The notes: generated from the letters alone by a model not told the origin. A stretch of DNA of 64,000 nt from Octopus sinensis (GCF_006345805.1 NC_043015.1:12276001-12340000); one strand, 5' to 3'. Shown: positions 6,503 through 64,000, counted from the first letter of the stretch. Numbers and translations are program-made.

Positions 6503-6900
6503 TGAGCTGGCAAGATCGTTAGCACGCCGGGCGAAATGTTTAGCGGTATTTGGTCTGCCGCTACGTTCTGGGTTCAAATTCTGCCGAGGTCGACTTTGCC
6601 TTTCATCCTTTCGGGGTCGATAAATTAAGTACCAGTTACGTATTGAGGTCGATGTAATCGACTTAATACCTATGTCTGTCCTTGTTTGTCCCCTCTACGT
6701 TTAGCCCCTTGTGGGTAATAAAGAAATAGGTATTTCGTCTGCCGTTACGTTCTGAGTTCGAATACCGCCGAGGTCGACTTTGCCTTTCATCCTTTCGGGG
6801 TCGATTAAATGAGTACCAGTTACACACTGGGGTCGATGTAATCGACTTAATCTGTTTGTCCCCTCTGTGTTTAGCCCCTTGTGGGTAGTAAAGAAATAGA
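6503..6900 (+). mobile_element. SINE family 1 (MetaSINE-like central domain), about 1.5 tandem copies
   Basis: gccgaggtcgactttgcctttcatcctttcggggtcgat core occurs twice here and recurs at 19880-20065, 32195-32405, 35420-35640, 47515-47750 and 59560-59790; family name from recollection. Confidence 0.8.
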
Positions 6901-9681: not shown

Positions 9682-9726
<45 letters not shown>

Positions 9727-9729
9727 TTT

Positions 9730-10140
9730 ATCTCTTACTTGTTTCAATCATTTGACCATGGCCATGCTGGAGCACTACCTTGAAGGGTTTTAGTGAAACA
9801 AATCAACCCTAGTACTTATATTTTTGAAGCCTAGTACTTATTTAATCAGTCTCTTTTGCTGAATTGCTAAGTTACAGGGACATAAACACACCAACACCAG
9901 TCATCAAGTGGTTATGGAGGTGGGGACAAACATAGACACAAAGGCACACATAAATACACACACACACATACATCACATATATATACTACAGGCTTCTTTC
10001 AGTTTCCTTGTACCAAATCCACTTACAAGGCTTTGGTTGGCCCGAGGCTATAGTAGAAGACACTTGCCCAAGGTGCCAGCAAGTGGGACTGAACCCAGAA
10101 CCATGTCGTTGGGAAGCAAGCCACTTGCCACACACATACG
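9730..10140 (-). mobile_element. tRNA/CORE-type SINE (family 2)
   Basis: gtagaagacacttgcccaaggtgcc CORE-like block, gggactgaaccc B-box region and the family 3' tail. Confidence 0.75.
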
Positions 10141-11049: not shown

Positions 11050-11273
11050 ATGCAACAGCTTTACTCTTTCACTTGTTTCAGTCATTTGACTGCGACCATG
11101 CTGGAGCACCGCCTTTAATCGAGCAACTCGACCCCGGGACTTATTCTTTGTAAGCCCAGTACTTATTCTATCGGTCTCTTTTGCCGAACCGCTAAGTGAC
11201 AGGGACATAAACACACCAGCATCAGTTGTCAAGCAATGCTAGGGGGACAAACACAGACACACAAACATACACA

Positions 11274-11318
<45 letters not shown>

Positions 11319-11420
11319 GACGGGCTTCTTTCAGTTTCCGTCTACCTACCAAAGTCACACTTGCCCGCAGTAGGACTGAACCCGGAACCATGTGGTTGGT
11401 AAGCAAGCTACTTACCACAC
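11050..11420 (-). mobile_element. tRNA/CORE-type SINE (family 2), young, internally deleted
   Basis: Near-identical to 53060-53470 and 63570-63960; CpGs retained. Confidence 0.8.
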
Positions 11421-12761
11421 AGCCACTCCTGCGCCTATCGAAATTTTTTTATCGATTGTTTTTGTTTAAATGTAAAATATCACAGCACCCCTAACTACTG
11501 TTAATTATACCCTAGGCAGTAGTTCTCAAACTTATTCTGGTGTGGAACCATTATGCAATTTTCCAAAAATGTCAGAACCCATTCCTATATTTTACAGACA
11601 AACCTTTACCACTCTAAGAGACCTATAGAATCAGTATAAGGCTTTAAAAATAATAAGTACCGAGGTCGATACATTCGACTAAAAATTCTTCAAGGTGGTG
11701 TCCCAGCATGACCGCAGTCTAATGACTGAAACAAGTAAAAATAAATAAATAAAACACACACATACACGCATGCATGCATCCATGCATACATACATACATA
11801 CATACATACATACTGATCCGTTGTCTATAGGTTAGATAAAAACACTCTATTTTGAGCAGTTATATTTTATGTAGTCAGGTAATATATCCTTGCTTATGGC
11901 ATATTACCGGTCACAACGTTACCATTGGTTTCACGTCTACTATTGCACTTAGCAGTGTAGTCGAGTCGTTGGACCAGCTGGCCGAAAGCACATAGCCTCT
12001 TTATCAAAGGAGTCTTGGCCAGTTTAATAGTGAGGAAAAAAAAAGGGTAAGATAAAAAAATTTCAGTAAGGGAAAAGAAAGGGTACTTTCCCTGGAACGA
12101 TTCATGCGGTGTCAGAAATGGATTCAACTGTGTACCTTTTCTTTTCCCCGTTCTCTGGTCCGCAAATGAGTAAGACCACGTTTCTAAAACAAAATTCCTC
12201 TTGTGAGGGCAAAATGCTTCGCAGCATTTCACCAACTAGTGTGAGACCACTCTTGGTTCTCTGATACAAAGTTCCTGTCTTAAATTAACATCTTATCAAA
12301 ATTCCATGTTAATTAATGCCTTAGACACCAATTTAATAATTACAAAAGTATGATACTTAATTCTTCGTGAGCTTCCAAATTAATTGAAATAAAGGCAGTG
12401 TAATTCAACAAAATACGATCAGTTGTTCTGCTTGAATTACTTCCCCTATTCCTTTAGCTTGTTAGCTACATTAAAAGCATGGAAAACGATACTGTCTACA
12501 ATTAACTTCGACAAATTACATAAAGGTTTTAGTGTTAATCCAAAAATTCATTACAAGAATCAAAGGATCTTTCATTTCCAATGGTAATAGAATCAAATGA
12601 AGCTTTGCAAAATAAAGAATTTTCAATGCGGACATTTTGCTTTTATTAATAATCTTATTCACCACCACCGCCAACTTTACTGAAAATGAAAAAAAAAGAG
12701 TCAAGATAAAAAAGGAAATATTGCAGCTCTTGCGACTTTTGATGGACTTTACATAATTTTG

Positions 12762-13837: not shown

Positions 13838-13864
13838 AAGTGGGAATAATAATAATAATAACCA

Positions 13865-14400
13865 TCATCATCTTCGTTTAACGTCTGTTTTCCATGCTGG
13901 CATGGGTCGAACGGTTTAACTGAGGACTAGCAAGCCAGGAGACTGCCCCATGCTCCAATCTGATTTGGCAAGGTTTCTACAGCTGGATGCCCTTCCTAAC
14001 ACCAACCACTCCAAGAATATAGTAGGTGCTTTTTACATACTGCCAGCACAGGCGCCAGTCGGGCAGTACTGGCATCAACCAGGCTTGTTTGGTGCTTTTT
14101 ACATGCCACCGGCATGGGAGCCAGTCAGACAGCACTGGCAACGACCACACTCGAGTGGTGCTTTTTACATACCACCAGCATGGGAGCCAGTCAGGTAGTA
14201 CTAGCATTGGCCATGACAATGATTTCACTTGACTCAAGCACAGTATATTGCCCAATGATCGAATGGTACTCTAAAATGGGCTGGCTATGCGACACTGGCA
14301 TAGGCCACAGCTATGGTCTCATTTGGCTTGCTGGGTCTTCTCAAGCACAATATATCTCCAAAGGTCTTGGTCACATGTCATTGCCTCCGTGAGGGATAAA
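13865..14400 (-). mobile_element. RTE LINE 3' end/3'UTR
   Basis: catcatcatcttcgtttaacgtc tail, gctggatgcccttcctaac, subrepeats and the RT C-terminal end. Confidence 0.7.
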
Positions 14401-46486: not shown

Positions 46487-46950
46487 AGGCATGACTGTGT
46501 GGTGAGAAGCTTGCTTCCCAACCACATAGTTCTGGGTTCAGTCCCACTGCACGGCACCTTGGGCAAGTGTCTTTTACTATAGCCTCAGGCTGACCAAAAC
46601 CTTGTAAGTAGACTTGGTAGATGGAAACTGAAAGAAGCCTGTCATAAATGTATGTATGTCTGTGTGTGTTTATGTGTGTGTGTGTGTGTGTGTGTGTGTA
46701 TGCGTGTGTGTGTGTGTGTCCATGTGTGTATGTATGTGTCTGTGTTTGTCCCGCCCCATCACTTGACAACCGACGTTGGTGTGTTTATGTCCCCTTCACA
46801 TAGTGGTTCAGGAAAAAAGATGAATAAAGTAAGTACTAGGGTTACAAAGAATAGGTCCTAGAGTTGATTTCTTCAACTAAAACCCTTTAAGGCAGTGCTC
46901 CAGCATGGTCACAATCAAATGACAGAAACATGTAAAAGAATAAAAGAATA
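46487..46950 (+). mobile_element. tRNA/CORE-type SINE (family 2), CpG-decayed
   Basis: ggcaccttgggcaagtgtctt CORE-like block and the family tail. Confidence 0.8.
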
Positions 46951-47226
46951 GTTGAAATCCAAAATATTCCCTAGCACAATAATTCCCAGACTGACAAACA
47001 TGAAACCATTTCTAGAAACAATGAGTTAAATCCTACGCCACCCTACCCCACCTCACTCCCACCCTCTTTTATTAAAAAGTCAAAAGACACAGTGTATCAT
47101 AGAAATCTTTCTTTGATATGGAATTGGACAAATTTTTGAAAAGCTTCAAATCATCGAAAATTTTAAACATGGTAATTAATCTACTTCTCTGTCCTCACAA
47201 CCAGCCCTGGAGGGTGGGGGTCCCAC

Positions 47227-47278
47227 CTTATAAGAAACACACTGTCCTGGAACAAAGAAGTTTGCCACAGTACAGCAT
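47227..47278 (-). other. Candidate further 5'UTR exon (52 nt) containing a short uORF
   Basis: Acceptor ttatttttag|ATG and donor AAG|gtggga; ATG...TAA gives MLYCGKLLCSRTVCFL*. Confidence 0.3.
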
Positions 47279-47514
47279 CTAAAAATAAATTCTTGTATGG
47301 CTATTAAACTTAATATAATCAAAGTGAAAAATGATGTCTTTTGACAAGAGTTGCCACATTGATCTAATTGCCGTGGAATGTGGGGAGTTGTTACATCAGC
47401 AGACATCACAGTGAGATTGTAACAGAGCTGTTTGTAAATAACAATTTGATTCTGATGTTTAAGGATGCTTGTATGATACTATTGTGATATTGCTCCTTAA
47501 AACATATCAATGTC

Positions 47515-47750
47515 TTGAGGGCGGCGAGCTGGTAGGATCATTAGCATTTCGGGCAAAGTGCTTAGCGGTATTTCATCTGCCGTTACATTCTGAGTTCAAA
47601 TTCCGCTGAGGTCGACTTTGCCTTTCATCCTTTCGGGGTCAATTAAATAAGTACCAGTTACGCACTGGGGTCGATGTTATCGACTTAATCCCTTTGTCTG
47701 TCCTTGTTTGTCCCCTCTATGTTTATCCCCTTGTGGGCAATAAAGAAATA
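47515..47750 (+). mobile_element. SINE family 1, near full length
   Basis: ggcggcgagctgg head, family core and tail. Confidence 0.8.
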
Positions 47751-48169
47751 AATATATCAATGTTTTGCAAATTATGATGGGAACAGAGCTACTTATTCTG
47801 GGGGAGGTGTGTTGTTAATTAAAACAACTTCTGTATTTGATTGATGCTTTTTTTACCAATTCCAGAATGATGAAAAAAATGAAAAAAACGAAAAAAAAAA
47901 CTGCAGCATGATGGGATTGCTAAATGGATGTAGCTAAATACCAAAAGACATTTTGTTTGACGATCTGCCTATTTTGAATGTTAAAGACAATAATGTTAGA
48001 AATATTTTTTTCTTAATTTATGTAACATTTTGATATTGCTGTTGCATTCATTAATTGATTTATTGCTATTTTATTATGTAAACTAATGTGTCCGCATGGA
48101 TGGTGGCTCACTTGCATTTAATGAGAGAGACTTGGAGATGCCACAATGAAAGATTGCTAAATGAAGGGA

Positions 48170-48360
48170 ATGAATGGAAGAAAGAGAGTCTGCCAAATGT
48201 CAATCCAATAGAGAAACCAGCTATCTGAATTGATAGTACCTTAGTAGATAAAGCAATTAAGGGTATGAAGACAGGGAAAGTCCCCAACCCATCAGTAATC
48301 ACTGCAGAGTTGCTTAAAATATCTAACGGTGTAGGCTATAATCTAGTCAGCCATATAGGG
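48170..48360 (+). mobile_element. RTE LINE RT N-terminal fragment
   Basis: LVDKAIKGMKTGKVPNPSVITAELLK resembles the RT domain-0 KAxGPDGIxAELLK motif. Confidence 0.6.
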
Positions 48361-48414
48361 TTGATCCTATGTATATGGCTGTAGAGTTGTGTAATAGATT
48401 AAGGACACAACCAA

Positions 48415-48690
48415 AAATTTTAAGCAACAATATGCCACTCACCTCCATTCTTTTAGATACGATAAACATAGTAAATCTACAACACTCGCCAACCACATAT
48501 ATCATCTCAAAAATACAAATTATACCCTATACTCTATCATGGTCCATACTGGACTCAGGGATACCCTACCAAGGTCAACACTCAACCTGCAAATTTTGCC
48601 TGTAGGAGGCACTTCACATATTAAAGCACAACTCTCCAGCACTGCTAAATAAACATAATGAGGCACTAAGCACATGCAACCACTGCTTTT
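48415..48690 (+). mobile_element. Penelope-like element GIY-YIG endonuclease C-terminal remnant
   Basis: FKQQYATHLHSFRYDKHSKSTTLANHIYHLK(fs)IPYTLSWSILDSGIPYQGQHSTCKFCL*EALHIL...LLNKHNEALSTCNH. Confidence 0.65.
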
Positions 48691-49680
48691 TTCATACATT
48701 CAAAGTCTACCACGAATCCAAATGCCTAAACGACCATACAGTACATTTCCACAATACCCCTTAGGTAATCCCAATAACATTATAAAACTACACTTTAACT
48801 CCTAATCCCTATCTAATTCCTCACTCATACCTGAGTATCACAACCATCTAATTATATTCATATGTATGTGCATCCATGCATATGTGTGCGTATATGTATG
48901 TATGTGTGTATGCATGTATGTATGTATGTGTGTATGTGTGAATGTATGTATGCAGGCAAGGTATATATACCTGCATGTACAGGGGCAATAATACATGCAG
49001 ATACACATATATATGGGTGCGCATGTGTGCATATGCAAATGAGTAAGAGCTGTATATGTAGACATTGATTTGTATAAACATCTGTATAAATTTATATATG
49101 CATGTTTAATATATACATATGTATACATCTTCACATATATATTTTCTTCTACTACTAAACACTGACCTGTCCAACCACCCAAATTCCTAAATTCTTCATT
49201 CCATACTACTACCCTTCTCTCTGGCCCATCACTTAGACTCTATCACTGCACAATTGACAATCCTTTAAGTTTTATACCTCTCTCTCTATCACCCCGCCCC
49301 CATTCCTGCTATCTTTTTACACTCTAATACCTTTCTCTCTCTATCACCCTTATCTCCCCATTCCTACTTTCAAATTATCTCTAACTGGCTCCCTTAATTC
49401 GTTCCTCTCTTCTTATTTTTTCTTCTTTTTTTTATTTATTTTTTTATACACACATGCTGATATATGACAGCATGTGGACCCCTTATTCGCATGATCACCG
49501 AATCTGGAACTCAACTATGGTCCATCCATAGCACTTATTCAGCATTACCTGACACCTTTGGGTCTCACTGACACCATTACCTCTCATAACCTCTATATAT
49601 GTATATATATATTTATACATATATCTGTATATGTATGTATACAATACATACATATACATACATATATATATATTTATATA

Positions 49681-49716
<36 letters not shown>

Positions 49717-49786
49717 TGTATGTATGTATGTATGTATGTATGTATGTATGTATGTATGCATCTATGTATGAATGTATGTATGCATG

Positions 49787-49839
<53 letters not shown>

Positions 49840-49879
49840 ACAAATGAAGAAAGAAATAGTTTGATTAAATTTTATTTAA

Positions 49880-51371
49880 CAGTAAGAAAATTCTAATTTC
49901 ATGACAAATTGCTTCATAACTTAATATCACTTGAATAATTTATATTTAAGAACCAAGGTCTAGAATCAAAAGGCCTTAGGGTTAACCTAGCAAAAACCAA
50001 AGTTTTAGTAAGTAGGAAGGCTGACAAATCACAAATCCCTTCAAGTAGATGGCTTTGCTTGATCTGTAGAAAAGGTGTGGGTAGAAACTCCATACGATGC
50101 ACCCGGTGTAAGCTACAGACACATAAAATGTGCAGCAATATCAAAGGAAGGTTAACTGGGAAGATAGTTTTTGTGTGTGGAAGATGCACAGGAGTAATAA
50201 ACACAAGATACTCAGAAAACAGATTCCATCACATGCCAGGGGGAAAAAACTAGAAGTAGTTAATAGCTTCCGCTACCTAGATGATCAAATCTGTAGTGGG
50301 GGTGGTTGCTCTGAGTGTATAGTGGCTAGAATAAGAGTAACCTGGGCAAAGTTTGGGGAGCTACTACCTCTGCTGACAACTAAGGGCCTCTCGCTTGGGA
50401 TGAAAGATACATTGTATGATGCATGTGTGCGAACTGCAATGCTACATGGCAGTGAAACATGGGCCATGACTGCTGAGTACATGCGTAGGCTTGAAAGAAA
50501 TGAAGCATGTATGATCCACTGGATGTGTAATGCTAGTGTGCATACACAACAGAGTGTAAGCGCCCTGATAGAAAAGCTGGACACAAGAAGCATCAAATGT
50601 AGTGTGCAAGAGAGACGCCTGCGCTGGTATGGTCATGTGTTATGTATGGATGAGGACAGCTGTGTGAGGAAGCACCACTCCTTTGGAAGGAACCTGTGGA
50701 AGAGGTAGATCAAGGTAGACCTGGGATGAGGTGGTGAAGAATGACCTTCGAACATTGGGTTTCACAGAAGCGATGACAGGAGACCGAGACTTTTGGAGAT
50801 ATGCTGTGATTGAGAAGATCCGGCAAGTAAAGTGAGATTACAGCCATGGCTGATGCCAGTGTTGCATGACCATCCCATTTAAGAGTACCCTTGATGCGTC
50901 AGGCAATATGATATACTTGAGAAGACCTGTTGAGTCAAATAAAACCAAAATCATAGCTGTGGCCAGTATTCCCTGACTGGCTCCCATGCCAGTGGCACAT
51001 TAAAAGCACCATCTGAATGTGGTCGATGCTAGGTCGACCTGACTGGCTCCCATGCCAGTAGTATGCAAAATGCAACATCCGAACGTGGCCAATGCCAGTA
51101 CCCTCTGATTGGCTCCCATGCCAGTGGCATACAAAAAGCACTATCTGAACAAGATCGATGCCAGACCCACCTTACTGGCTCCTGTGCCAGTGGCACGTAT
51201 AAAGCACCCACTACACTCTCAGTGTGCTTGGCATTATGAAGGGTATCCAGCTGTAGAAACATAGCCAGATCAGATTGGAGCTTGGTGCATCCGCTGGCTC
51301 TCTAGACCTCAGTCAAACTGTCCAACCCATGCCACTATGGAAAATGGTCATTAGATGATGATGATGATGAT

Positions 51372-51420
<49 letters not shown>
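49880..51420 (+). mobile_element. 5'-truncated RTE LINE (RT end, Cys-rich insert, C-terminus, 3'UTR, (GAT)n)
   Basis: KGLRVNLAKTKV...CRKGVGRNSIRCTRC...LEVVNSFRYL...LYDACVRTAMLHGSETW...RRLRWYGHV; same family as 8727-9605. Confidence 0.9.
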
Positions 51421-51441
<21 letters not shown>

Positions 51442-51775
51442 GATAAATAAATTATTTACATGCCTGCATTCATGCAAAATGCAAAAATCCTTCAAAATAA
51501 TGCAGAATTTAAGCTATGCCTTCAGGTGAAAGAAAGTCTTTCTTAAATAATAGATTCTTGATGTACTGTTCCTATAGGAATTGTAAGTCAAAATTTTAAA
51601 ATATTATGGAAGACAATCATAATAAAGTTGATATAAATTGAGAAGATTTTCTAATAAATAGAAGGGAATTTTAGCTATATATAAAAGTAACTAATAGATA
51701 TTATTAGTACAACAAAAGAAAAGAAATATACTTAATAAAAATCGAGAAAATAAAAGATCGCAAACATAGAGAAAA

Positions 51776-51818
<43 letters not shown>

Positions 51819-52108
51819 TAAAACTAAATAAAAGTATTTAGAGACGATATTTATGAAATATAGGGATTGATATCAACAAGAAAATGTGCACAATATTAAA
51901 TTTTAAAAATTAGAAATTTGAAGGTATAAGTATTTTTTTAAAATTCGCAGAAAGTATGGAAGACAAATGGGAACAAAATCAACATAACCAATGAAATGAA
52001 ACAGTCCACCAAAATGAGAAGGGAGATCCATCAAGATTTCAAGAAATAATTATTAGATAGCAATAATAAATCTCTGAACGATATGTAAACAGTAACTGCT
52101 CGACAACG

Positions 52109-52474
52109 TAAAGTATACTAGCCATCTCAATATGGCTAACCACTAAGGGTGGGTGTTACTGTAGCTTTTAGCCCCAGGAGATCATCGTCTCCAGCTGACT
52201 TTAGGCACACTTTCTAGAAAAACAATAAGTATTTGCAAACAGGTCTCCCTTTCATTGTAAACCGGTGACTGCCGTACGCCGAAGACAGGCAAATACCTAG
52301 AAACTGCAGTCCGTGCGTGTCACTTAGGTTGACGAGGGAGGGATGACCTCCCTTTGAAAATAACATAAGTGCACAGAAGTGTGCCTAAAGCCAGCTGGAG
52401 ATCTCCTGGGGCTAAAAGCTACAGTAACACCCACCCTTAGTGGTTAGCCATATTGAGATGGCTAGTATACTTTA
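52109..52474. repeat. Inverted repeat (about 100-bp arms, 52109-52212 and 52377-52474) enclosing a hammerhead
   Basis: taaagtatactagccatctcaatatggctaaccactaagggtgggtg... is paired by ...cacccacccttagtggttagccatattgagatggctagtatacttta. Confidence 0.9.
52265..52323 (+). ncRNA. Type I hammerhead ribozyme (U4C core variant) with extended stem I
   Basis: GTGAC-tgc-CGTACG-CCGAAGA-cAGGcaaataCCTa-GAA-ACTGCAGT-C-CGTGCG-t-GTCAC; palindromic stem III, GUC triplet (cleavage after 52311). Confidence 0.7.
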
Positions 52475-53059
52475 AATTATTAGATAGTTTTAGTATAAAG
52501 AAAGGAAATTCATATATTTATAAAGACAGAATTTACATAATATAGAGTTTGATATCAACAAAAAAATTATTAAATTAAAGATTAAAGGTTCATATATATA
52601 TAAGTAAATAGGTTATGATGTAAGATAAAATTAATATAATTTGATAATGTAGATAAGGATAGATTAAAGCATATAATGTAAGTATATGGAAAAACAATAT
52701 TAATATACATTCATTAGATATTCTTTAAAATACATGATTATAATCATAATGTAAATATATATCTTTTATGTTACCTCTTTCAGTCACTAGACTGCAGTCA
52801 TGTTGGGTGTCAGCTTGGAAAGTTTTAGATAATAAAAAAATTGATCCCGATACTCTGCAGATCTTATTCAGTGAAATGACTAACACTAGTTGTCAAGGCA
52901 AAATGGAGAGACAAGCATAAATATAAATACACACACACACGCATGCACACATGCACATACACACACAAGCTTACATGCATTTATACATAAATAGGTGTGG
53001 GCATGATAAATTCTTGGAATTGATAATGAAAGTAATTTTTCAAAGAAAATAACAAACAG

Positions 53060-53470
53060 GTGCAGGAGTGGCCGTGTGGTAAGTAGCTTGCTAACCAACC
53101 ACATGGTTCCGGGTTCAGTCCCACTGCGTGGCATCTTGGGCAAGTGTCTTCTGCTATAGCCACAGGCCGACCAAAGCCTTGTGAGTGGATTTGGTAGGTG
53201 GAAGCTGAATGAAGTCTGCCGTATATATGTATATATATATATGTGTGTGCGTGTATGTTTGTGTGTCTGTGTTTGTCCAGCTAGCATTGCTTGACAACCG
53301 ATGCTGGTGTGTTTACGTCCCCGTTACTTAGCGGTTCGGCAAAAGAGACCGATAGAATAAATACTGAGCTTACAAAAGAATAAGTCCCGGGGTCGAGTTG
53401 CTTGATTAAAGGCGGTGCTCCAGCATGGCTGCAGTCAAATGACTGAAACAAGTAAAAGAGTAAAAGAGTA
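53060..53470 (+). mobile_element. tRNA/CORE-type SINE (family 2), full length
   Basis: Head gcaggagtggccgtgtggtaag...ggttcagtccc (A/B box-like), CORE-like block, central microsatellite and tail gactgaaacaagtaaaagag. Confidence 0.85.
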
Positions 53471-53832
53471 AACAAGTTTACATTTCCTGTAATAATATTG
53501 ACCTTGTTAAAGAAATTGAAATAATTGCTAGGAGCATGTTTATTTTTCAGTTGTTTCAGTTATTAGACCACAGCCATACTGGAGCTGTGCCTCAGGGTGT
53601 TTAGCTGAACACATTGAATCCAGTACTTATTTTTATTAATCCTAGCTCTCCTTCTATGTTTTGTTTTGTTTTTTAATTCTTTGCCAAAGCTACTAAATTA
53701 TGGGGAAATAAACAAACCAACACTTGTTGTCACACAATGGTATGTGATAAGCGCAAACACAGAGACACAGACTTACATACATACATTTGTAAATATATAT
53801 TTGTATGTGTATATATGTATATATATTATATA

Positions 53833-53867
<35 letters not shown>

Positions 53868-54025
53868 TCGTATATATATACATATATATATATGTATGCA
53901 TACACACACATACACATATATGTATACATCTATCTATCTATCATATATATATATATATAATGATAGATCAACAAAAAAGTACTCCATCTGCTGAGAAATA
54001 AATATATTTATATATGTATGTATGC

Positions 54026-54072
<47 letters not shown>

Positions 54073-54170
54073 CCATCCAACCCGTGCCATCCGTCCAACC
54101 CGTGCTAGCACGGAAATGGACGTTAAACGATGATGATGATGATGATGATGAGATATATATATATATATAT

Positions 54171-54500
54171 ACTAGCAGTATCGCCCGGCGTTGCTCGGGT
54201 TTGTTTCAACCCGCTGGAATTGTAATTTTGAAAAGTAAAAATTTTGTGAACATTTTTCTGGTCGAAATACACCGAAAAGTGGCGACACAGCAGTGAAAAA
54301 ATCGTAAAAAATAGGGATTTTCATAGAAAAAAGCATCTTTTTGATGTAAATAATTTTTGGTGTTAACATGGTCCGATTTGAATTTTATGTTCTACGGAAG
54401 GAAGAGCAACCCTTCTTCTACCATACTCTCAATTTTGGTCAACTTGCGCCGCAGGGTCTCGGAGGAGATAGTGTTAGTTGAAGGTTACCATTCTAGGTGC
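54171..54500 (+). mobile_element. HINE/DINE-1-like element
   Basis: actagcagtatcgcccggcgttgctcgggtttg 5' terminus, shared with 55836. Confidence 0.6.
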
Positions 54501-54949
54501 CTGAGTAACAACCTCGCGGATTTACAGATAAATGAATTAATTACTATTTTACAGAATAAAATTAAATAATTCTTGAAAATTAATTAATATTAATATTTTT
54601 TGAACAAAGTAAATAATTTTTAAAACTTAAATAATAATTTTTTTTACACAAACGCGAACGGGGAAAAGGGGGTGGCAAATTCGATTTACATACCTAAATT
54701 TTTTCTTTTTCATGACATTGTAGCAAAATAGTAGTGAATTATATAAATACCAGCAGTACATTTTTTTTCTGGGGTATTTTTTTTCAACCTCGTCACATAT
54801 TTTCCCCTTTCAATTTAAACAAAGTCTTAATTAAGCAATTACGGCAGCTTAGCAATGGTTTCAATACAGGCGTGACATCTGTATCTCAATTGTTCAAAAC
54901 CCTTCGAATTTTTTCGCACGTGATGATATCATAGTGAAAACTTTCAATT

Positions 54950-55835
54950 ACGCGCGCTTAGAAGTACGCTCGCAAATTAATACTACCAAAATTTTGAAGT
55001 TCGCGCTCCGCTTGTGTGTGTGTGTGTGTGCGTGCTTTAGGTGTACGTAGGTATGTGTTTTTGTGTGTGTATGTCACTGAAGCCATACATACATATATAC
55101 ATACATAACCTCTCTCTCTCTTTTCTCTCTCAGTCACTCACTACAAAAAGTGAATAAAAAAAGTTCAGTTATTTCTGTCTTTCACTCTGTCTGTCTCTTT
55201 ACACACACTAACAAAAGCACTTCACTTACACACCACACTTTCTGTGTCGCACAACCCATCAAACACACACACACACACACACACACTCACGCACGCACAC
55301 ATGTACATCAATGCTTTCGGAGTGAAATGTTAAAATATTGAGTTTTCTTGAATTTTGTCTTAATTGGGGGTGAAATTGAAAGAAATATATTATGGCATGA
55401 CCGAATGGAGTACTTTGAAAAATCTTAGGTAAACTCTAATTGAAGAAATTGTGTGAGGAGTAAATCGTTATGTATTTATTTGTTTCTGTTTGCTGTGTTT
55501 TTTTATTTTTTGAGTAGTGGTTTAAATACTTTCAGTTTAGTCTTCCTCAAATCACTCTGTCGCTATTTACTTTCATTTTATTCGTTGCACGCTGTGTGTG
55601 TGCGTGTGCGTGTGGTGTAAACCACAATAAGAAAAGCATTTGACATACACACCAGAATGTGAGTTTTCTGTAAATTTTGCTTAATTGGAGTTTAAATTTT
55701 AAAAAACTGGACCTGGCATGACCCGATGCATTCTACTCTTAAAAATGCTAGGTAAATTGTAATTGAAGAAATCCTATATTGTAGATTTCTATAAGTTACA
55801 AAGGGAGGCAGATAAAATCTGCCTTTTATAAGAGA
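54950..55835 (+). mobile_element. Helentron-type non-autonomous element with 3' hairpin
   Basis: Ends ggcagat-aaa-atctgcc followed by ttttataagaga; its last ~300 bp are repeated at 57335-57643. Confidence 0.55.
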
Positions 55836-56472
55836 CTAGCAGTATCGCCCGGCGTTGCTCGGGTTTGTAAGGGAAATAACTATATAAGCATTTTTAGAGA
55901 GTTATAGCCAAAAAATAGCAAAAAATGCATTAAAAATGGAAAAAATATGATGGTAAATTTTTTTTAAATCGTTGACTCATCGTAGACATTTTTAGAGAGT
56001 TACTTCCCTTATATAATAGCGAAAAAATGCATTAGAATGGAAAAAAAACGATGGTAAATTTTTTTTTAAATCGTAGACTCATGTAGACGCTTTCTTAGCC
56101 ATTTCTCTTTTGGTGTCTTCAAGCCATGAAGTCGTTGTTCTAAAAGAACACTGGTCACCTTGACAACGCATTATGACGTTGATTTCCTTACACTCCCTTC
56201 CCCACAGGTGCAGGTGTGAGCGTGGACGCCAACTCCGCCGCCATCGACACACGAAAAATTATGCATTAAAATGGAATAAAAAATGATGTTAAATTATTTT
56301 TAAAATCGTAGACTCATCGTAGACGCGCGCTAATATTCAGACGGGCTCGATATGAATCACGACTATAAGCTACCCGAATTTGGTTAAACTGTACCGCAAA
56401 ATGTGGGAGTAGTTAGGAATCTAAATCGAAGGGGACAGACACTCACACAACTACAGTTTTATATATATAGAT
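55836..56472 (+). mobile_element. HINE/DINE-1-like element, apparently complete
   Basis: 5' actagcagtatcgcccggcgttgctcggg, internal tandem units and 3' ttttatatatatagat. Confidence 0.6.
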
Positions 56473-56559
56473 ATACATAGCGCAGTAGTGGTGAGATATG
56501 ACAGCAAAGAAAAGCATACATTCACTCTCTGCATGCAATTAGACTCGGAAAGTTCGTGA

Positions 56560-56870
56560 GGAACCCATTGACCCAATTTGCTGACTTTTCCGATAGCACA
56601 CAGGTGTCAATGAATGGTTGAATGACCAAATCCAAGCTTCTCTGCTAGTTCCTCAACAGTTACGATGATATTTTGTTCCACCAGGGTTTTCAGGATGTCC
56701 TTGTCGAGTTCTACAGATCTTTCAGGATGAGGCTCGTCTTCTAGGCTGTAGTTTATGGCTCGGGATTTCTGGAACCACCATTGACACTGCCTTACGCTTA
56801 TTGTCCAATCCCCATATACTGCATTAATATTTCTTGTACTTCGCACACATTTATATTCTGTTATTCTTTA
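56560..56870 (-). mobile_element. mariner (Mos1-like) transposase N-terminal fragment
   Basis: TRNINAVYGD.TISVRQCQWWFQK...SLEDEPHPERSVELDKDILKTLVEQN..VTVEELAEKLGFGHSTI. Confidence 0.85.
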
Positions 56871-56905
56871 TATGTTTCAGCCTTGAGGTTGTGGCCATGC
56901 TGGAT

Positions 56906-56936
<31 letters not shown>

Positions 56937-57334
56937 CTATCTGTCTGTCTGTCTGTATGTATATATGTATATGTATGTGTGTGAACAATAATATTTTCAA
57001 CAGATGTGTTGCAAATGTATCTGATTGTTCTCAAGCTTCAATACTGTGTGTGTGTGTATGTGTGTGTGTGTATGTATGTATGTATATGTATGTATGTATA
57101 TATATGTATGTATGTATGTATGTGTGTATGTATGTGTGTGTATGTATGTGTGTGTATGTGTGTGTGTATGTATGTATGTATGTATGTATGTATGTATGTA
57201 TGTATGTATGTATGTATGTATGTATGTTTACTTTATTACTAATTACTCTCTTCCAAGAACATTTTCACTCACTCTTAGCTCTTAGCTTCCCATACATTTT
57301 ACTCATGTATCTATCAGCGTCATAGACAGAATAC

Positions 57335-57643
57335 TTTCACTTTAGTCTTCCTCAAATCACTCTGTCGCTATTTACTTCCATTTTATTCGTTGCCCACTGT
57401 GTGTGTGCGTTTGCGTGTGGTGTAAACCAGACTAAGAAAAGCATTTGACACACACACCAGAATGTGAGTTTTCTGTAAATTTTGCTTAATTGGGAGTTTA
57501 AATTTTAAAAACTGGACCTGGCATGACGCGATGCATTGTACTCTCAAAAATGCTAGGTAAATTGTAATTGAAGAAATCCTATATTGTAGATTTGTATAAC
57601 TCCCAAAGGGAGGCAGATAAAATCTGCCTTTTATAATAAGAGA
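57335..57643 (+). mobile_element. 3' copy of the Helentron-type element
   Basis: Direct repeat of about 55530-55835, including the ggcagataaaatctgcc hairpin. Confidence 0.6.
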
Positions 57644-59559: not shown

Positions 59560-59790
59560 CTTATTTCTTTACTGCTCACAAGGGGCTACACAGAAGGGAC
59601 AAACAAGGACAGACAAACGGATTAAGTCGATTGTATCGACCCCAGTGTGTAACTGGTACTTATTTAATCGACCCCGAAAGGATGAAAGGCGAAGTCGACC
59701 TCAGCGGTATTTGAACTCAGAACGTAGCGGCAGACGAAATACCGCTTAGCATTTCGCCCGTCATGCTAACGTTTCTGCCAGCTCGCCGCT
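59560..59790 (-). mobile_element. SINE family 1
   Basis: Family core in reverse orientation. Confidence 0.8.
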
Positions 59791-60002: not shown

Positions 60003-61210
<1,208 letters not shown>

Positions 61211-61722: not shown

Positions 61723-62113
61723 AATTGCTCTTTTGGTTAATTCTTATTTGTAACAATTTAAATACTACTTTCATTTTGGACATTCCTTCGATATGACTCG
61801 ACGAATTCAAAACATCAGTTCGGCTGTTTCCGTGAACAGCTTAAAAACATGTGGCCAACTGTCATGAAATGGGAGGAGGATAAGAAAGCTCATGGGTTGT
61901 ACGTGTGTCATTTTGAGGTCTTACGCAATTGAGAATATTTTCAAAGGCTCCGTAATAGGAAACAAACATTTTCATGAAAATTATTTCACGTAAGCTCTCA
62001 AGTGGGTTTTCTGGTTTTGAAGGTGAGATTTGAGGGCAGTCGTTGCGAGGCGGCAGAAACTATTGCTTCAGTTATCAAACCCGGAACTAAATTCAAGACA
62101 TTTCATTGCTGCA

Positions 62114-62965
62114 ATGACTGACATGGATGCCGTACCCGAAAAAAGGAGAAAACGGAGTGACAGTACAGGCGACCATTTCGACGACCGACAAACCGAAGCA
62201 GAACTATTGAAATGCTTCGATAAATATGATATGACACATAAAAAGCGAGGTGTCGCCTACATCTTCAACAATGAAACTTTCAGACACTCGGAACTTACTT
62301 GTGGTGGATCATCAAAAGACGCACAAGATTTTAAAATGGCATTAATAAGACTTGGATTACAGGAAGAAGATATCCATATTAATACAGATTTAAGTACCGA
62401 AGAGATGATTGGGGTTTTGCAAAGGTTTGGCAAAGATAATACTGATATTGATTCTGATTGTTTTATTTGTGCAATACTAAGTTATAGTAACTCAGAAGGT
62501 CTAATCTATGGATACGACGATAAAACTGAACTAGAGAAATTACTTTCTTATCTGAGACCCGATCGTTGTCCATGTTTAAAAGGAATACCTAAATTATTCT
62601 TTATTCAAGCATGCCGAGGAAGTAAGATGGATTGTGGGGTCGAACAAAATGATGTTGCTTCCTATGGATTTGAAAAAACGTCATCCAAAATTCCAATTAT
62701 GGCAGATATGCTGGTTGCTTATTCATCGTGTGATAAATATCCTTCTTTCGGAAATGAAGAAGGAGGCTCGTGGTTTATGCAAACTCTAAGTAAAATGTTG
62801 ACGTATTATGGCACTGAACATGAAATCATGACACTTTTAACCGCTGTCTCTAAGTACGTTGCCTCTTTAGGCTCCCGGATTCCGGACAATTCAGCATACA
62901 ATGAATATAAACAAATGCCTCACATTACGTCGACATTGACTAAACAACTGAAGTTTGAACCGTAG
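62114..62965 (+). CDS. Single-exon caspase-3/7-like protein (283 aa), predicted catalytically inactive
   Basis: Open frame with p20/p10 motifs RGVAYIFNN, DSDCFICAILS, PKLFFIQACRG, KIPIMADML, GSWFMQTL, QMPHITSTLTKQL; SHG is replaced by SYS and both S1 arginines are substituted. Confidence 0.93.
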   Translation: MTDMDAVPEKRRKRSDSTGDHFDDRQTEAELLKCFDKYDMTHKKRGVAYIFNNETFRHSELTCGGSSKDAQDFKMALIRLGLQEEDIHINTDLSTEEMIGVLQRFGKDNTDIDSDCFICAILSYSNSEGLIYGYDDKTELEKLLSYLRPDRCPCLKGIPKLFFIQACRGSKMDCGVEQNDVASYGFEKTSSKIPIMADMLVAYSSCDKYPSFGNEEGGSWFMQTLSKMLTYYGTEHEIMTLLTAVSKYVASLGSRIPDNSAYNEYKQMPHITSTLTKQLKFEP

Positions 62966-63429: not shown

Positions 63430-63960
63430 GATTATATATTTATGTGTTTGTGTATGTTTGTATGTCTGTGTTTGTTCCCCCACCCTTGCTTAACAACCGA
63501 CTCGCCTCCATTCAAAAATTGGGTTACCGACCCACTAAAAAATTGAGGTTGGATTAAAAGTGCTACTCTCTCTCTTTTACTTGTTTCAGTCATTTGACTG
63601 CGGCCATGCTGGAGCACCGCCTTTAGTCGAGCAAATCGACCCCGGGACTTATTCTTTGTAAGCCCAGTACTTATTCTATCGGTCTCTTTTTGCCGAACCG
63701 CTAATGACGGGGACGTAAACACATCAGCATCGGTTGTCAAGCAATGCTAGGGGAACAAACACAGACACACGCACATACATACATATATATATATATACAT
63801 ATATACGACAGGCTTCTTTCAGTTTCCGTCTACCAAATCCACACACAAGGCATTGGTCGGCCCGGGGCTATAGTAGAAGACACTTGTCCAAGATGCCACG
63901 CAGTGGGACTGAACCCAGGACCATGTGGTTGGTTAGCAAGCTACTTACCACACAGCCACT
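63430..63960 (-). mobile_element. tRNA/CORE-type SINE (family 2), full copy plus partial
   Basis: Reverse copy of 53060-53470 at about 63570-63960, with a partial tail at 63430-63500. Confidence 0.85.
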
Positions 63961-64000
63961 CGGCGTTTGGCCTCCTCAATAGGCATGTTATAAAAAAATG

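What the first reader, a model, noticed from the sequence alone, without database searches (positions are those of the whole stretch)
62114..62965. Intact effector-caspase homolog with a dismantled active site: candidate pseudo-caspase or decoy
Seen: an uninterrupted 283-aa ORF with QACRG intact (C167). Aligned by eye to caspase-3, the catalytic His-Gly (H121-G122) is Tyr-Ser (Y124, TAT at 62483). The S1 Arg64 equivalent is Cys (C63, TGT at 62300; TCGGSSKD vs SRSGTDVD), and the Arg207 equivalent is Gly (G213, GGA at 62750; SFGN vs SWRN). Established: the His-Cys dyad and both arginines are needed for Asp-specific cleavage, and inactive caspase homologs (cFLIP, C. elegans CSP-2/CSP-3) act as regulators. 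Inference: four hits on functional residues with no stop or frameshift, plus a retained linker site (VEQND|V) and dimerisation-strand motif, point to selection for a non-catalytic, possibly dominant-negative effector-caspase partner rather than random decay.
Basis: partly seen in the sequence, partly recalled or inferred. Interest (0 to 1): 0.85.

Follow-up and report, generated by a model that had tools for sequence, protein, structure and literature searches.

The report
Catalytically dead octopus effector caspase
This is a real, intact Octopus sinensis gene for a caspase-3/7-like protein that has lost the residues needed to cut proteins. Its reading frame and fold have still been kept by selection in at least three octopus species, so it is probably a non-enzymatic "decoy" caspase, a known kind of regulator not yet described in cephalopods.

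Summary
Window 62114-62965 (+) is an uninterrupted 283-codon caspase ORF (Pfam PF00656, E=6e-48). QACRG is kept, but the catalytic His-Gly is Tyr-Ser and both S1 arginines are replaced (Cys63, Gly213).

The window is Octopus sinensis chromosome CM016877.1. The gene is the first member of a collinear tandem array of single-exon effector-caspase genes, also present in O. bimaculoides. Syntenic orthologues in O. vulgaris and O. bimaculoides also lack the His and both Arg, so this is not a sequencing error.

Overall dN/dS is about 1.0-1.1, against 0.3-0.5 for a catalytically intact neighbour. Three results argue against plain decay:
- The 732-bp core took 97 substitutions with no stop (P about 0.02) and no frameshift (P from 0.03 down to 1e-9).
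- Replacements avoid family-conserved columns (8/98 against 60/146, p=6e-9), on both branches.
- The dimer strand is unchanged.

Best reading: a pseudo-caspase kept for its fold and binding surfaces. Its regulatory mechanism, and whether it is expressed, remain untested. It is a new member of a known kind, of moderate interest.

The parts
62114..62965 (+). Complete single-exon CDS of the pseudo-caspase (283 aa plus TAG). NCBI models it as 'caspase-3-like', isoform X1 of 283 aa.
   Evidence: An exact-sequence look-up places it in O. sinensis GCA_006345805.1 CM016877.1.
62114..62230 (+). N-terminal 39 codons: short prodomain with no CARD or DED. Disordered in the model. Lost in O. bimaculoides (ATG to TTG plus a 1-bp deletion).
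   Evidence: pLDDT below 50 for residues 1-26 and 30-34. Obim alignment and three-frame translation.
62300..62302 (+). Cys63 (TGT) in the column of caspase-3 Arg64, an S1-pocket arginine. Cys in all three species.
62483..62488 (+). Tyr124-Ser125 (TAT AGT) in the columns of the catalytic His121-Gly122. Cys-Ser in O. vulgaris and Cys-Gly in O. bimaculoides.
62606..62620 (+). QACRG pentapeptide (Q165-G169) with the catalytic Cys167 kept in all three orthologues.
62639..62653 (+). VEQND (176-180): inter-subunit linker Asp in register with the family's V/I-E-K/R-x-D|A motif. A possible cleavage site for an active caspase.
   Evidence: The linker 169-193 is disordered in the model. That it is cleaved is inference.
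62744..62755 (+). SFGN (211-214): Gly213 in the column of caspase-3 Arg207, the second S1 arginine. Glu in O. vulgaris and Gly in O. bimaculoides.
62912..62956 (+). Q267-F281 (QMPHITSTLTKQLKF): the C-terminal beta-6 strand, which forms the dimer interface in caspase-3/7. 0 of 12 residues (270-281) differ between O. sinensis and O. bimaculoides.
   Evidence: The dimer role is taken from established caspase-3/7 structures and was not tested here.
62797..62798 (+). GT used as an internal splice donor by the NCBI isoform X2 model (XP_036367180.1, 236 aa). It joins codon 228 to an exon about 8.2 kb downstream, outside the window.
   Evidence: P0035 sequence. The peptide LYEILVMN is found after an AG at L002 about 13862, equal to window position about 70975. 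RNA support for the model could not be checked.
61943..62113 (+). Upstream 171 bp (likely 5'UTR or promoter-proximal). Less diverged from O. bimaculoides than the CDS: 9.9% against 12.8% mismatches, with no indels.

Best explanation
The ORF encodes a pseudo-caspase: a catalytically dead paralogue of effector (caspase-3/7-type) caspases. It belongs to an octopus tandem array of single-exon caspase genes.

Shown:
- It folds as a caspase.
- It keeps Cys167, the linker Asp and the dimer strand.
- It lacks the catalytic His and both S1 arginines, so Asp-directed proteolysis should be abolished.
- These losses predate the O. sinensis / O. bimaculoides split.
- Since that split the core reading frame and the fold-determining residues have been preserved.
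- The former substrate loops (L1, L4, the 123-129 loop) and surface helices change at or above the neutral rate.

Inferred: the protein is kept for binding, not catalysis. Most likely it pairs through the conserved beta-6 interface with active paralogues from the same array. Alternatively it competes with them for upstream activators, IAP-type inhibitors or cleavage at its linker Asp. Either way it would tune effector-caspase activity. The direction, inhibition or enhancement, cannot be told from sequence.
For: Family and fold:
- Pfam E=6e-48.
- AlphaFold2 pTM 0.74 with a confident core.
- Foldseek top hits are Sf-caspase-1 and caspase-7/3, with TM normalised to target 0.83-0.91.

Active-site losses:
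- They are present in the syntenic orthologues of O. vulgaris (L001) and O. bimaculoides (L003).

Array:
- Five collinear single-exon genes lie on one strand in both species.
- They form clean orthologue pairs.

ORF retention over 97 substitutions in the 732-bp core:
- P(no stop) is 0.02-0.03.
- 3.5 to 20 frameshifting indels are expected and none is seen (P from 0.03 to 1e-9).
- The only core indel is 3 bp.

Fold constraint:
- Replacements hit 8 of 98 family-conserved columns against 60 of 146 variable ones (Fisher 6e-9).
- dN is 0.040 against 0.241 in the two classes.
- Both branches are depleted in conserved-column changes: 3/30 (p=3e-4) and 4/27 (p=4e-3).
- Changes in conserved columns are mostly conservative or at ex-catalytic sites.
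- The beta-6 strand has 0 of 12 residues changed, and helix 238-251 has 1 of 14. L1 has 7 of 14 and L4 has 9 of 18.

Precedent:
- Decoy caspases arising by duplication are an established category (PMC7586951; Bryant et al. 2010 as cited in PMC3141678 and PMC7768685).
Against: - Gene-wide dN/dS cannot be distinguished from 1. It is 1.12 (bootstrap 0.70-2.08) against O. bimaculoides and 1.03 (2 synonymous, 8 non-synonymous changes) against O. vulgaris.
- CDS divergence equals flank divergence between O. sinensis and O. vulgaris: 1.2% against 1.3% and 0.7%.
- The O. bimaculoides orthologue has lost its first ATG and has a 1-bp deletion in codon 12 or so. It can only start at Met40. A 2-bp indel rewrites its last residues.
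- There is no direct evidence of transcription or protein. No transcript contig carries the exact protein. None of its peptides was found in the stored, truncated supplements of an O. vulgaris mucus proteome.
- No interaction or activity data exist.
- The indel expectation comes from microsatellite-rich flanks and may be too high, which is why a conservative range is given.
Confidence: 0.55

Rival explanations
1. A duplicate that is dying or has recently died. After losing catalysis the copy became redundant and now drifts neutrally. It simply has not yet acquired a stop or frameshift in the caspase core.
For: - dN/dS is about 1.0-1.1 for this lineage and about 1.2-1.4 for another dead (EASRG) pair. 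The intact neighbour pair P0013/P0004 gives 0.32-0.52.
- CDS divergence is equal to or above flank divergence.
- The ex-catalytic sites continue to flip: Y/C/C at the His site and G/E/G at the Arg207 site.
- O. bimaculoides has a prodomain frameshift, has lost its start codon and has a C-terminal 2-bp indel.
- There is no expression evidence.
- The O. sinensis - O. vulgaris comparison has only 10 substitutions, so it has no power to show constraint.
Against: - P(no stop) is about 0.02, and P(no frameshift) is at most 0.03, over the O. sinensis - O. bimaculoides divergence.
- Replacements are about five times rarer in family-conserved columns, on both branches. A neutral sequence would not show this.
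- The dimer strand and the central 130-165 segment are almost unchanged.
- These tests speak for most of the time since the split. They do not exclude death within the last 1% or so of divergence.
Confidence: 0.3
2. Still chemically active but repurposed. The retained Cys167 works without His, for example with altered, non-Asp specificity. Alternatively it forms a redox or metal site with the new cysteines (Cys at the Arg64 site in all three species, Cys at the His site in two of them).
For: - QACRG and Cys167 are invariant in the three orthologues, while other dead paralogues lost the Cys instead.
- O. vulgaris and O. bimaculoides carry three cysteines at positions that line the caspase catalytic centre and S1 pocket.
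- That these positions are close in space is recalled from caspase-3 structures and was not measured here.
Against: - In O. sinensis the His-site residue is Tyr, not Cys. In O. vulgaris the Arg207 site is Glu. The putative site is therefore not conserved.
- By established knowledge, caspase His mutants are inactive.
- No precedent is known to me for a His-less caspase protease.
Confidence: 0.07
3. Assembly or sequencing artefact: the true gene has His and Arg, and the substitutions are errors.
For: None found.
Against: Three independent assemblies (GCA_006345805.1, GCA_951406725.2, GCA_001194135.2) all lack His121, Arg64 and Arg207 equivalents at the syntenic locus.
Confidence: 0.01

Closest known systems
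Aedes aegypti CASPS18 and other dipteran 'caspase-like decoy molecules' (Bryant et al. 2010, cited in PMC3141678 and PMC7768685)
   Same: A short-prodomain, effector-like caspase paralogue. It arose by lineage-specific duplication next to active copies, has substitutions in critical catalytic residues, and is thought to regulate a paralogous caspase.
   Different: A different phylum and an independent origin. According to the title of the cited paper, CASPS18 enhances its paralogue's activity, and that function was shown experimentally. Here Cys is kept while His and both S1 Arg are lost, and no function has been tested.
cFLIP(L), the human pseudo-caspase (PMC7586951)
   Same: A full caspase-like fold with p20/p10 organisation and dead catalytic residues. 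It acts by heterodimerising with an active paralogue and can inhibit or activate it depending on dose.
   Different: cFLIP is an initiator-type (caspase-8/10) paralogue with tandem DEDs, recruited to the DISC. The octopus protein is effector-type with a 39-residue prodomain and no recruitment domain. From my own knowledge, cFLIP lacks the catalytic Cys, which this protein keeps.
C. elegans CSP-2 and CSP-3
   Same: Catalytically inactive caspase homologues that bind and restrain the executioner caspase CED-3.
   Different: CSP-3 is essentially a small-subunit-only protein. The octopus protein has both subunits and a linker Asp.
Catalytically intact octopus array paralogues (e.g. O. sinensis P0013 / O. 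bimaculoides P0004)
   Same: 59-64% identical, with the same single-exon structure, length, linker motif and tandem locus.
   Different: They keep Arg64, His-Gly, QACRG and Arg207, and evolve with dN/dS of 0.3-0.5 rather than about 1.

Membership tests
Peptidase family C14A (caspases), as a sequence and fold family | Significant match to the caspase domain profile covering both p20 and p10 | tested here: met
   PF00656 E=6.2e-48, residues 45-279 against profile positions 1-232 of 233. PDB caspase-3/7 at E around 1e-42.
Peptidase family C14A (caspases), as a sequence and fold family | Caspase alpha/beta fold | tested here: met
   AF2 pTM 0.74 with a confident core. Foldseek top hits are all caspases, prob 1.00, TM to target 0.83-0.91.
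Active caspase (Asp-specific cysteine protease) | Catalytic His-Cys dyad | tested here: not met
   Cys167 is present. The His column holds Tyr124 (Cys in the two orthologues).
Active caspase (Asp-specific cysteine protease) | S1 pocket Arg64 / Gln161 / Arg207 (caspase-3 numbering) | tested here: not met
   The three positions are Cys63, Gln165 and Gly213, so only Gln is kept.
Active caspase (Asp-specific cysteine protease) | Measured proteolytic activity | not testable with these tools
   Needs recombinant protein and a DEVD or peptide-library assay.
Effector (executioner) caspase subgroup | Short prodomain without CARD or DED; closest to caspase-3/7 | tested here: met
   39 residues precede the domain and there is no other Pfam hit. 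Best solved relatives are Sf-caspase-1, caspase-3 and caspase-7.
Pseudo-caspase / decoy caspase | Paralogue of active caspases that arose by gene duplication | tested here: met
   First gene of a collinear tandem array that includes catalytically intact members.
Pseudo-caspase / decoy caspase | Catalytic residues substituted while the fold is retained | tested here: met
   97 of 105 family-conserved columns are kept, and 3 of the 8 lost are R64, H121 and G122.
Pseudo-caspase / decoy caspase | Maintained by selection (not a pseudogene) | tested here: inconclusive
   For: ORF retention and depletion of changes in conserved columns. Against: gene-wide dN/dS about 1 and the N-terminal frameshift in O. 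bimaculoides.
Pseudo-caspase / decoy caspase | Expressed, and binds or regulates an active caspase | not testable with these tools
   The only hint of a transcript is the NCBI isoform model X2. No peptides were found in the truncated mucus-proteome supplements.
Pseudogene (non-functional duplicate) | Stops or frameshifts in the coding region | tested here: not met
   None in O. sinensis or O. vulgaris. In O. bimaculoides they occur only in the prodomain and the last residues, and its caspase core is intact.
Pseudogene (non-functional duplicate) | Neutral substitution pattern: dN/dS of 1 and replacements spread evenly | tested here: inconclusive
   dN/dS of about 1 is met. Even spread is not met (Fisher 6e-9).

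The most novel reading that the evidence does not exclude
The octopus single-exon effector-caspase array may be a generator of dead caspases. At least three lineages in it have lost different catalytic residues:
- this gene has lost His and both Arg;
- P0003/P0007 have lost Cys and Arg207;
- P0011/P0015 have lost Gln and Cys.

The two dead lineages tested keep open frames and fold cores, while their loop and surface positions evolve at or above the neutral rate. Relative to gene-wide dS, variable-class dN/dS is about 1.8 (1.4-2.3) for this gene and about 1.7 for P0011/P0015.

That pattern would fit a diversifying decoy system. It could be engaged in a conflict with pathogen or endogenous caspase inhibitors, or it could set cell-type-specific death thresholds. 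That is more than a single regulator.
Probability: 0.2. Interest if true: 0.65.

Novelty: new member of a known kind. Interest (0 to 1): 0.45.

Why it matters
Pseudo-caspases are few and mostly of the initiator type (cFLIP), or known only from nematodes and Diptera.

A cephalopod effector-type pseudo-caspase would give an independent natural experiment in how a dead protease is reused. It sits in a lineage-specific array beside active copies and other independently inactivated copies.

It would also caution that counts of 'caspase-3/7' genes in octopus genomes, transcriptomes and proteomes overstate the number of active enzymes.

The claim is cheaply testable by expression, a DEVDase assay and co-expression with neighbouring paralogues.

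Tried and rejected
- **Chance ORF or mis-frame.** Rejected by the Pfam and PDB E-values.
- **Sequencing error.** Rejected by three assemblies.
- **More caspase copies in the window or near flanks.** tblastn found only this one in the window and in each 20-kb locus.
- **Gene conversion from active neighbours as the reason the frame stays open.** Rejected. Orthologues group cleanly by gene. Derived states (Cys63, non-His, CPCLKG, HITSTL) are shared across species and were not overwritten.
- **Retrogene hallmarks.** No poly(A) tract follows the stop. Target-site duplications were not looked for. All array members have single-exon CDS, so an old retroposition followed by tandem duplication is plausible but unproven.
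- **Transcript evidence.** The two Logan contigs carrying paralogues (L009, L010) look genomic, with microsatellite ends and no poly(A), so they say nothing about expression.
- **P0007 DNA.** It could not be fetched, so the P0003/P0007 pair was not analysed for dN/dS.
- **Protein evidence.** The accessions and tryptic peptides of this protein were absent from the stored, truncated supplements of the O. vulgaris skin-mucus proteome. Only a canonical caspase-3-like protein matched.
- **Literature.** No paper describing octopus pseudo-caspases or this array was found. Bryant et al. 2010 itself is not held and is cited through two papers that describe it.
- **Gene range in the index.** The 9.3-kb 'gene range' is explained by isoform X2's downstream exon, not by introns in the main CDS.

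Full report
**1. The observation**

Window 62114-62965 (+) is an uninterrupted ORF of 283 codons ending in TAG. It is the longest ORF in the 64-kb window. No ORF of 60 aa or more overlaps it on the other strand.

It matches the Pfam caspase domain end to end: PF00656, residues 45-279, E=6.2e-48. It matches solved effector caspases: Spodoptera caspase-1 at 1.4e-46, human caspase-3 at about 1e-42 and caspase-7 at about 1e-37.

TGT at 62300 is C63, TAT at 62483 is Y124, GGA at 62750 is G213, and C167 lies in QACRG.

The HMMER alignments and a 23-sequence MAFFT alignment confirm the residue equivalences:
- C63 stands in the Arg64 column.
- Y124-S125 stand in the His121-Gly122 columns.
- G213 stands in the Arg207 column.
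- Gln and Cys of QACRG are kept.
- VEQND|V is in register with the family's linker motif V/I-E-K/R-x-D|A.

An AlphaFold2 model has a confident caspase core (pTM 0.74). The prodomain (1-34) and linker (169-193) are disordered. Foldseek returns only caspases at the top, with TM to target 0.83-0.91.

**2. Where it is and what surrounds it**

An exact-sequence look-up places the protein on Octopus sinensis chromosome CM016877.1 of GCA_006345805.1. Window base 57114 corresponds to record position 12,333,114.

NCBI models the gene as 'caspase-3-like'. Isoform X1 is this 283-aa ORF. Isoform X2 (XP_036367180.1, 236 aa) uses a GT at 62797-62798 inside the ORF and an exon about 8.2 kb downstream.

The closest proteins in the 5.8-billion-sequence collection are all from Octopus:
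- an O. vulgaris orthologue at 97% identity (P0001);
- an O. bimaculoides protein at 72% (P0002);
- about 16 paralogues at 54-64%.

Identity then drops to vertebrate caspase-7 at 39%.

Every paralogue whose locus I fetched has a single-exon CDS. They lie head to tail on one strand:
- In O. bimaculoides CM046619.1: P0002 at 21,769,765, P0003 at 21,783,651, P0004 at 21,822,334 and P0015 at 21,836,608.
- In O. sinensis: this gene at 12,338,114, P0013 at 12,397,197 and P0011 at 12,409,226.

A neighbour-joining tree gives clean O. sinensis / O. bimaculoides orthologue pairs in the same order as the genes.

The O. bimaculoides locus is syntenic with the window. Flanks align at 85-89% on both sides of the CDS. 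The gene is therefore the first member of a conserved tandem array. The 62 kb upstream in the window holds no other caspase.

**3. The lesions are old, and the dead sites keep drifting**

| Position (caspase-3 numbering) | O. sinensis | O. vulgaris | O. bimaculoides |
|---|---|---|---|
| Arg64 | Cys | Cys | Cys |
| His121 | Tyr (TAT) | Cys (TGT) | Cys (TGT) |
| Gly122 | Ser | Ser | Gly |
| Arg207 | Gly | Glu | Gly |

QACRG is intact in all three.

Catalysis was therefore lost before these species split. Since then the ex-catalytic positions have kept changing, as expected if they no longer matter.

Other array members have lost other residues:
- P0003 has QASRG and SFGN.
- P0007 has EASRG and SFIN.
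- P0011 and P0015 have EASRG.
- P0012 has EACRG and SVIH.

**4. Is it decaying or maintained?**

*Evidence pointing to decay*

- Nei-Gojobori dN/dS is 1.03 against O. vulgaris (2 synonymous, 8 non-synonymous changes).
- It is 1.12 against O. bimaculoides (dS 0.133, bootstrap 0.70-2.08). YN00 and ML give 1.12-1.14.
- A second dead pair (P0011/P0015) gives 1.2-1.4. The catalytically intact pair P0013/P0004 gives 0.52 (NG86) or 0.32-0.34 (YN00, ML).
- Between O. sinensis and O. vulgaris the CDS differs at 1.2% of sites. The flanks differ at 1.3% upstream and 0.7% downstream.
- Between O. sinensis and O. bimaculoides the core CDS differs at 12.8%. Alignable flanks differ at 8-10%.
- In O. bimaculoides the first ATG is TTG. 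A 1-bp deletion in an A-run at about codon 12 puts the second ATG out of frame, so the protein can only start at Met40. A 2-bp indel rewrites the last residues.

*Evidence against plain neutrality*

(a) ORF retention. The 732-bp core (codons 40-283) took 97 substitutions between the two species without a stop. Simulation with the observed transition/transversion ratio gives P(no stop) of 0.02-0.03.

(b) Indels.
- The O. sinensis - O. vulgaris flanks show 18 indel events per 62 substitutions, 72% of them not multiples of three.
- Scaled to 97 substitutions, that predicts about 20 frameshifting indels in the core.
- Even at a ratio six times lower, 3.5 are expected.
- None occurs inside the caspase core, whose only indel is 3 bp. 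The 2-bp indel noted above falls in the last few codons and only rewrites the tail. P ranges from 0.03 down to 1e-9.

(c) Where replacements fall.
- I defined conserved columns (90% identity or more) from the other 16 octopus paralogues only.
- O. sinensis and O. bimaculoides differ at 8 of 98 conserved columns and at 60 of 146 variable ones (Fisher 6e-9).
- Two of the 8 are the ex-catalytic His and Gly columns. Of the other six, five are conservative (V/I, L/F, R/K, V/A, M/I) and one is not (S/I).
- dN is 0.040 in conserved columns and 0.241 in variable ones. Relative to gene-wide dS this is 0.30 (0.10-0.53) against 1.8 (1.4-2.3).
- Polarised with the paralogues, both branches are depleted in conserved-column changes. 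O. sinensis has 3 of 30 (p=3e-4) and O. bimaculoides has 4 of 27 (p=4e-3). The truncated O. bimaculoides copy has therefore also stayed under fold constraint.

(d) Regional pattern.

| Region | Residues changed |
|---|---|
| beta-6 strand, 270-281 (dimer interface in caspase-3/7) | 0 of 12 |
| Helix 238-251 | 1 of 14 |
| Segment 130-165 | 4 of 36 |
| Loop L1 | 7 of 14 |
| Loop L4 | 9 of 18 |
| Loop 123-129 | 3 of 7 |

(e) Which conserved columns were lost. This lineage has lost 8 of 105 family-conserved columns, and three of them are exactly R64, H121 and G122. By a simple hypergeometric count, the chance of including those three is about 3e-4.

*Conclusion from the two sets*

Selection has preserved an open, foldable caspase domain for most of the time since the O. 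sinensis / O. bimaculoides split. It has released, or is diversifying, the substrate groove and the surface.

The data cannot exclude that function was lost very recently. The O. sinensis - O. vulgaris comparison has only ten substitutions.

**5. Mechanism**

*Shown*
- A caspase fold without the His of the dyad and without two of the three S1 residues.
- Retained Cys167, the linker Asp and the dimer strand.
- Tandem linkage to active paralogues.

*Established knowledge*
- The His-Cys dyad and the Arg/Gln/Arg pocket are required for Asp-directed cleavage.
- Effector caspases are obligate dimers through beta-6.
- Dead caspase paralogues regulate live ones. cFLIP(L) is described in PMC7586951. 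Dipteran decoy caspases are described through PMC3141678 and PMC7768685, which cite Bryant et al. 2010.

*Inference*
- The protein acts by binding. It may heterodimerise with array paralogues. It may instead compete with them for activators, IAP-type inhibitors or processing at D180.
- The sign of the effect is unknown.

I put 0.55 on 'selected non-catalytic caspase-fold protein', 0.30 on 'dying or recently dead duplicate', 0.07 on 'repurposed chemistry at Cys167' and about 0.01 on artefact.

**6. Comparison with what is known, and novelty**

- It is a member of the C14A sequence and fold family and of the effector subgroup.
- It fails the defining tests for an active caspase.
- It meets the structural and evolutionary criteria of a pseudo-caspase or decoy. 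The functional criteria (expression, binding) could not be tested.
- The nearest analogue in kind is the mosquito decoy CASPS18. cFLIP(L) and CSP-2/3 are analogous in logic but differ in subgroup or architecture.
- I found no paper describing octopus pseudo-caspases or this single-exon array. The protein itself is already in databases, labelled 'caspase-3-like' or 'caspase-1-like'.

Verdict: a new member of a known kind, with moderate interest of 0.45. Interest would be higher if the whole array proves to be a diversifying decoy system.

**7. Limits**

- The codon analyses are pairwise and approximate. No PAML or HyPhy was available.
- Only three orthologues exist in the searchable data.
- The indel expectation comes from repeat-rich flanks.
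- The structure model is a monomer built from a shallow alignment.
- Expression evidence is absent.

No step in this work needed to be referred.

Noticed in passing
outside the window: O. bimaculoides L004 10001-10846 (P0003), L007 10001-10888 (P0015); O. sinensis L008 10001-10849 (P0011); proteins P0007, P0012: Other members of the same tandem array have lost different catalytic residues. P0003 has QASRG and SFGN, P0007 has EASRG and SFIN, P0011 and P0015 have EASRG, and P0012 has EACRG and SVIH. The dead pair P0011/P0015 also has dN/dS of about 1.2-1.4 with an open frame in both species.
   Followed up: partly
window 62797-62798, and L002 about 13862-13890 (equal to window position about 70975, beyond the window): The NCBI isoform X2 (XP_036367180.1, 236 aa) splices from inside the ORF after codon 227 to an exon about 8.2 kb downstream. 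It replaces the last 56 residues, including the dimer strand, with 9 residues. The product would not be a complete caspase fold. RNA support for the model is unknown.
   Followed up: partly
L003 9850-10010 (O. bimaculoides orthologue): The first ATG is TTG, and a 1-bp deletion in an A-run puts the second ATG out of frame (MDDVPAKRKN*). The annotated protein starts at the Met equivalent to M40. The following residues are still conserved in the old frame.
   Followed up: yes
window 36318-37205 (-): A 295-codon ORF with two MYND zinc-finger matches (PF01753, E=1e-19). It may be a gene or part of a transposon. A low-complexity ORF at 35686-36321 (+) abuts it (overlap of 4 bases, 36318-36321).
   Followed up: no
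window 60035-61056 (-): Two adjacent ORFs read like the reverse-transcriptase and C-terminal part of a LINE ORF2 (for example '[12 protein letters not shown]'). A long (TA)n/(TATG)n microsatellite interrupts them, about 1 kb upstream of the caspase gene. There was no Pfam hit at E<=0.001 for the 60035-60631 part (the 60628-61056 part was not scanned), so the call rests on my reading. The element is also present at the O. vulgaris locus.
   Followed up: partly
window 9724-10134, 11060-11436, 46492-46950, 53066-53471, 63564-63961; also 6504-6736, 32168-32401, 35424-35639, 47521-47751, 59561-59789: Two families of dispersed short repeats, about 400 bp and about 230 bp, at 75-91% identity and in both orientations. 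They are probably SINE-like elements and showed up as many secondary BLAST hits.
   Followed up: no
window 46911-48983 and 51922-54171 against L001 4-4317: The O. vulgaris locus lacks about 2.9 kb (window 48984-51921) and about 3.5 kb (window 54172-57642) that are present in O. sinensis. These are large insertion/deletion differences between two very close species.
   Followed up: no
PMC11431876 supplements: The O. vulgaris skin-mucus proteome is enriched about five-fold for caspase-domain proteins (13 accessions under IPR011600). One is a canonical caspase-3-like protein (A0A7E6EGP6) with an intact THG / QACRG / WRN. The pseudo-caspase was not found in the stored, truncated files.
   Followed up: partly
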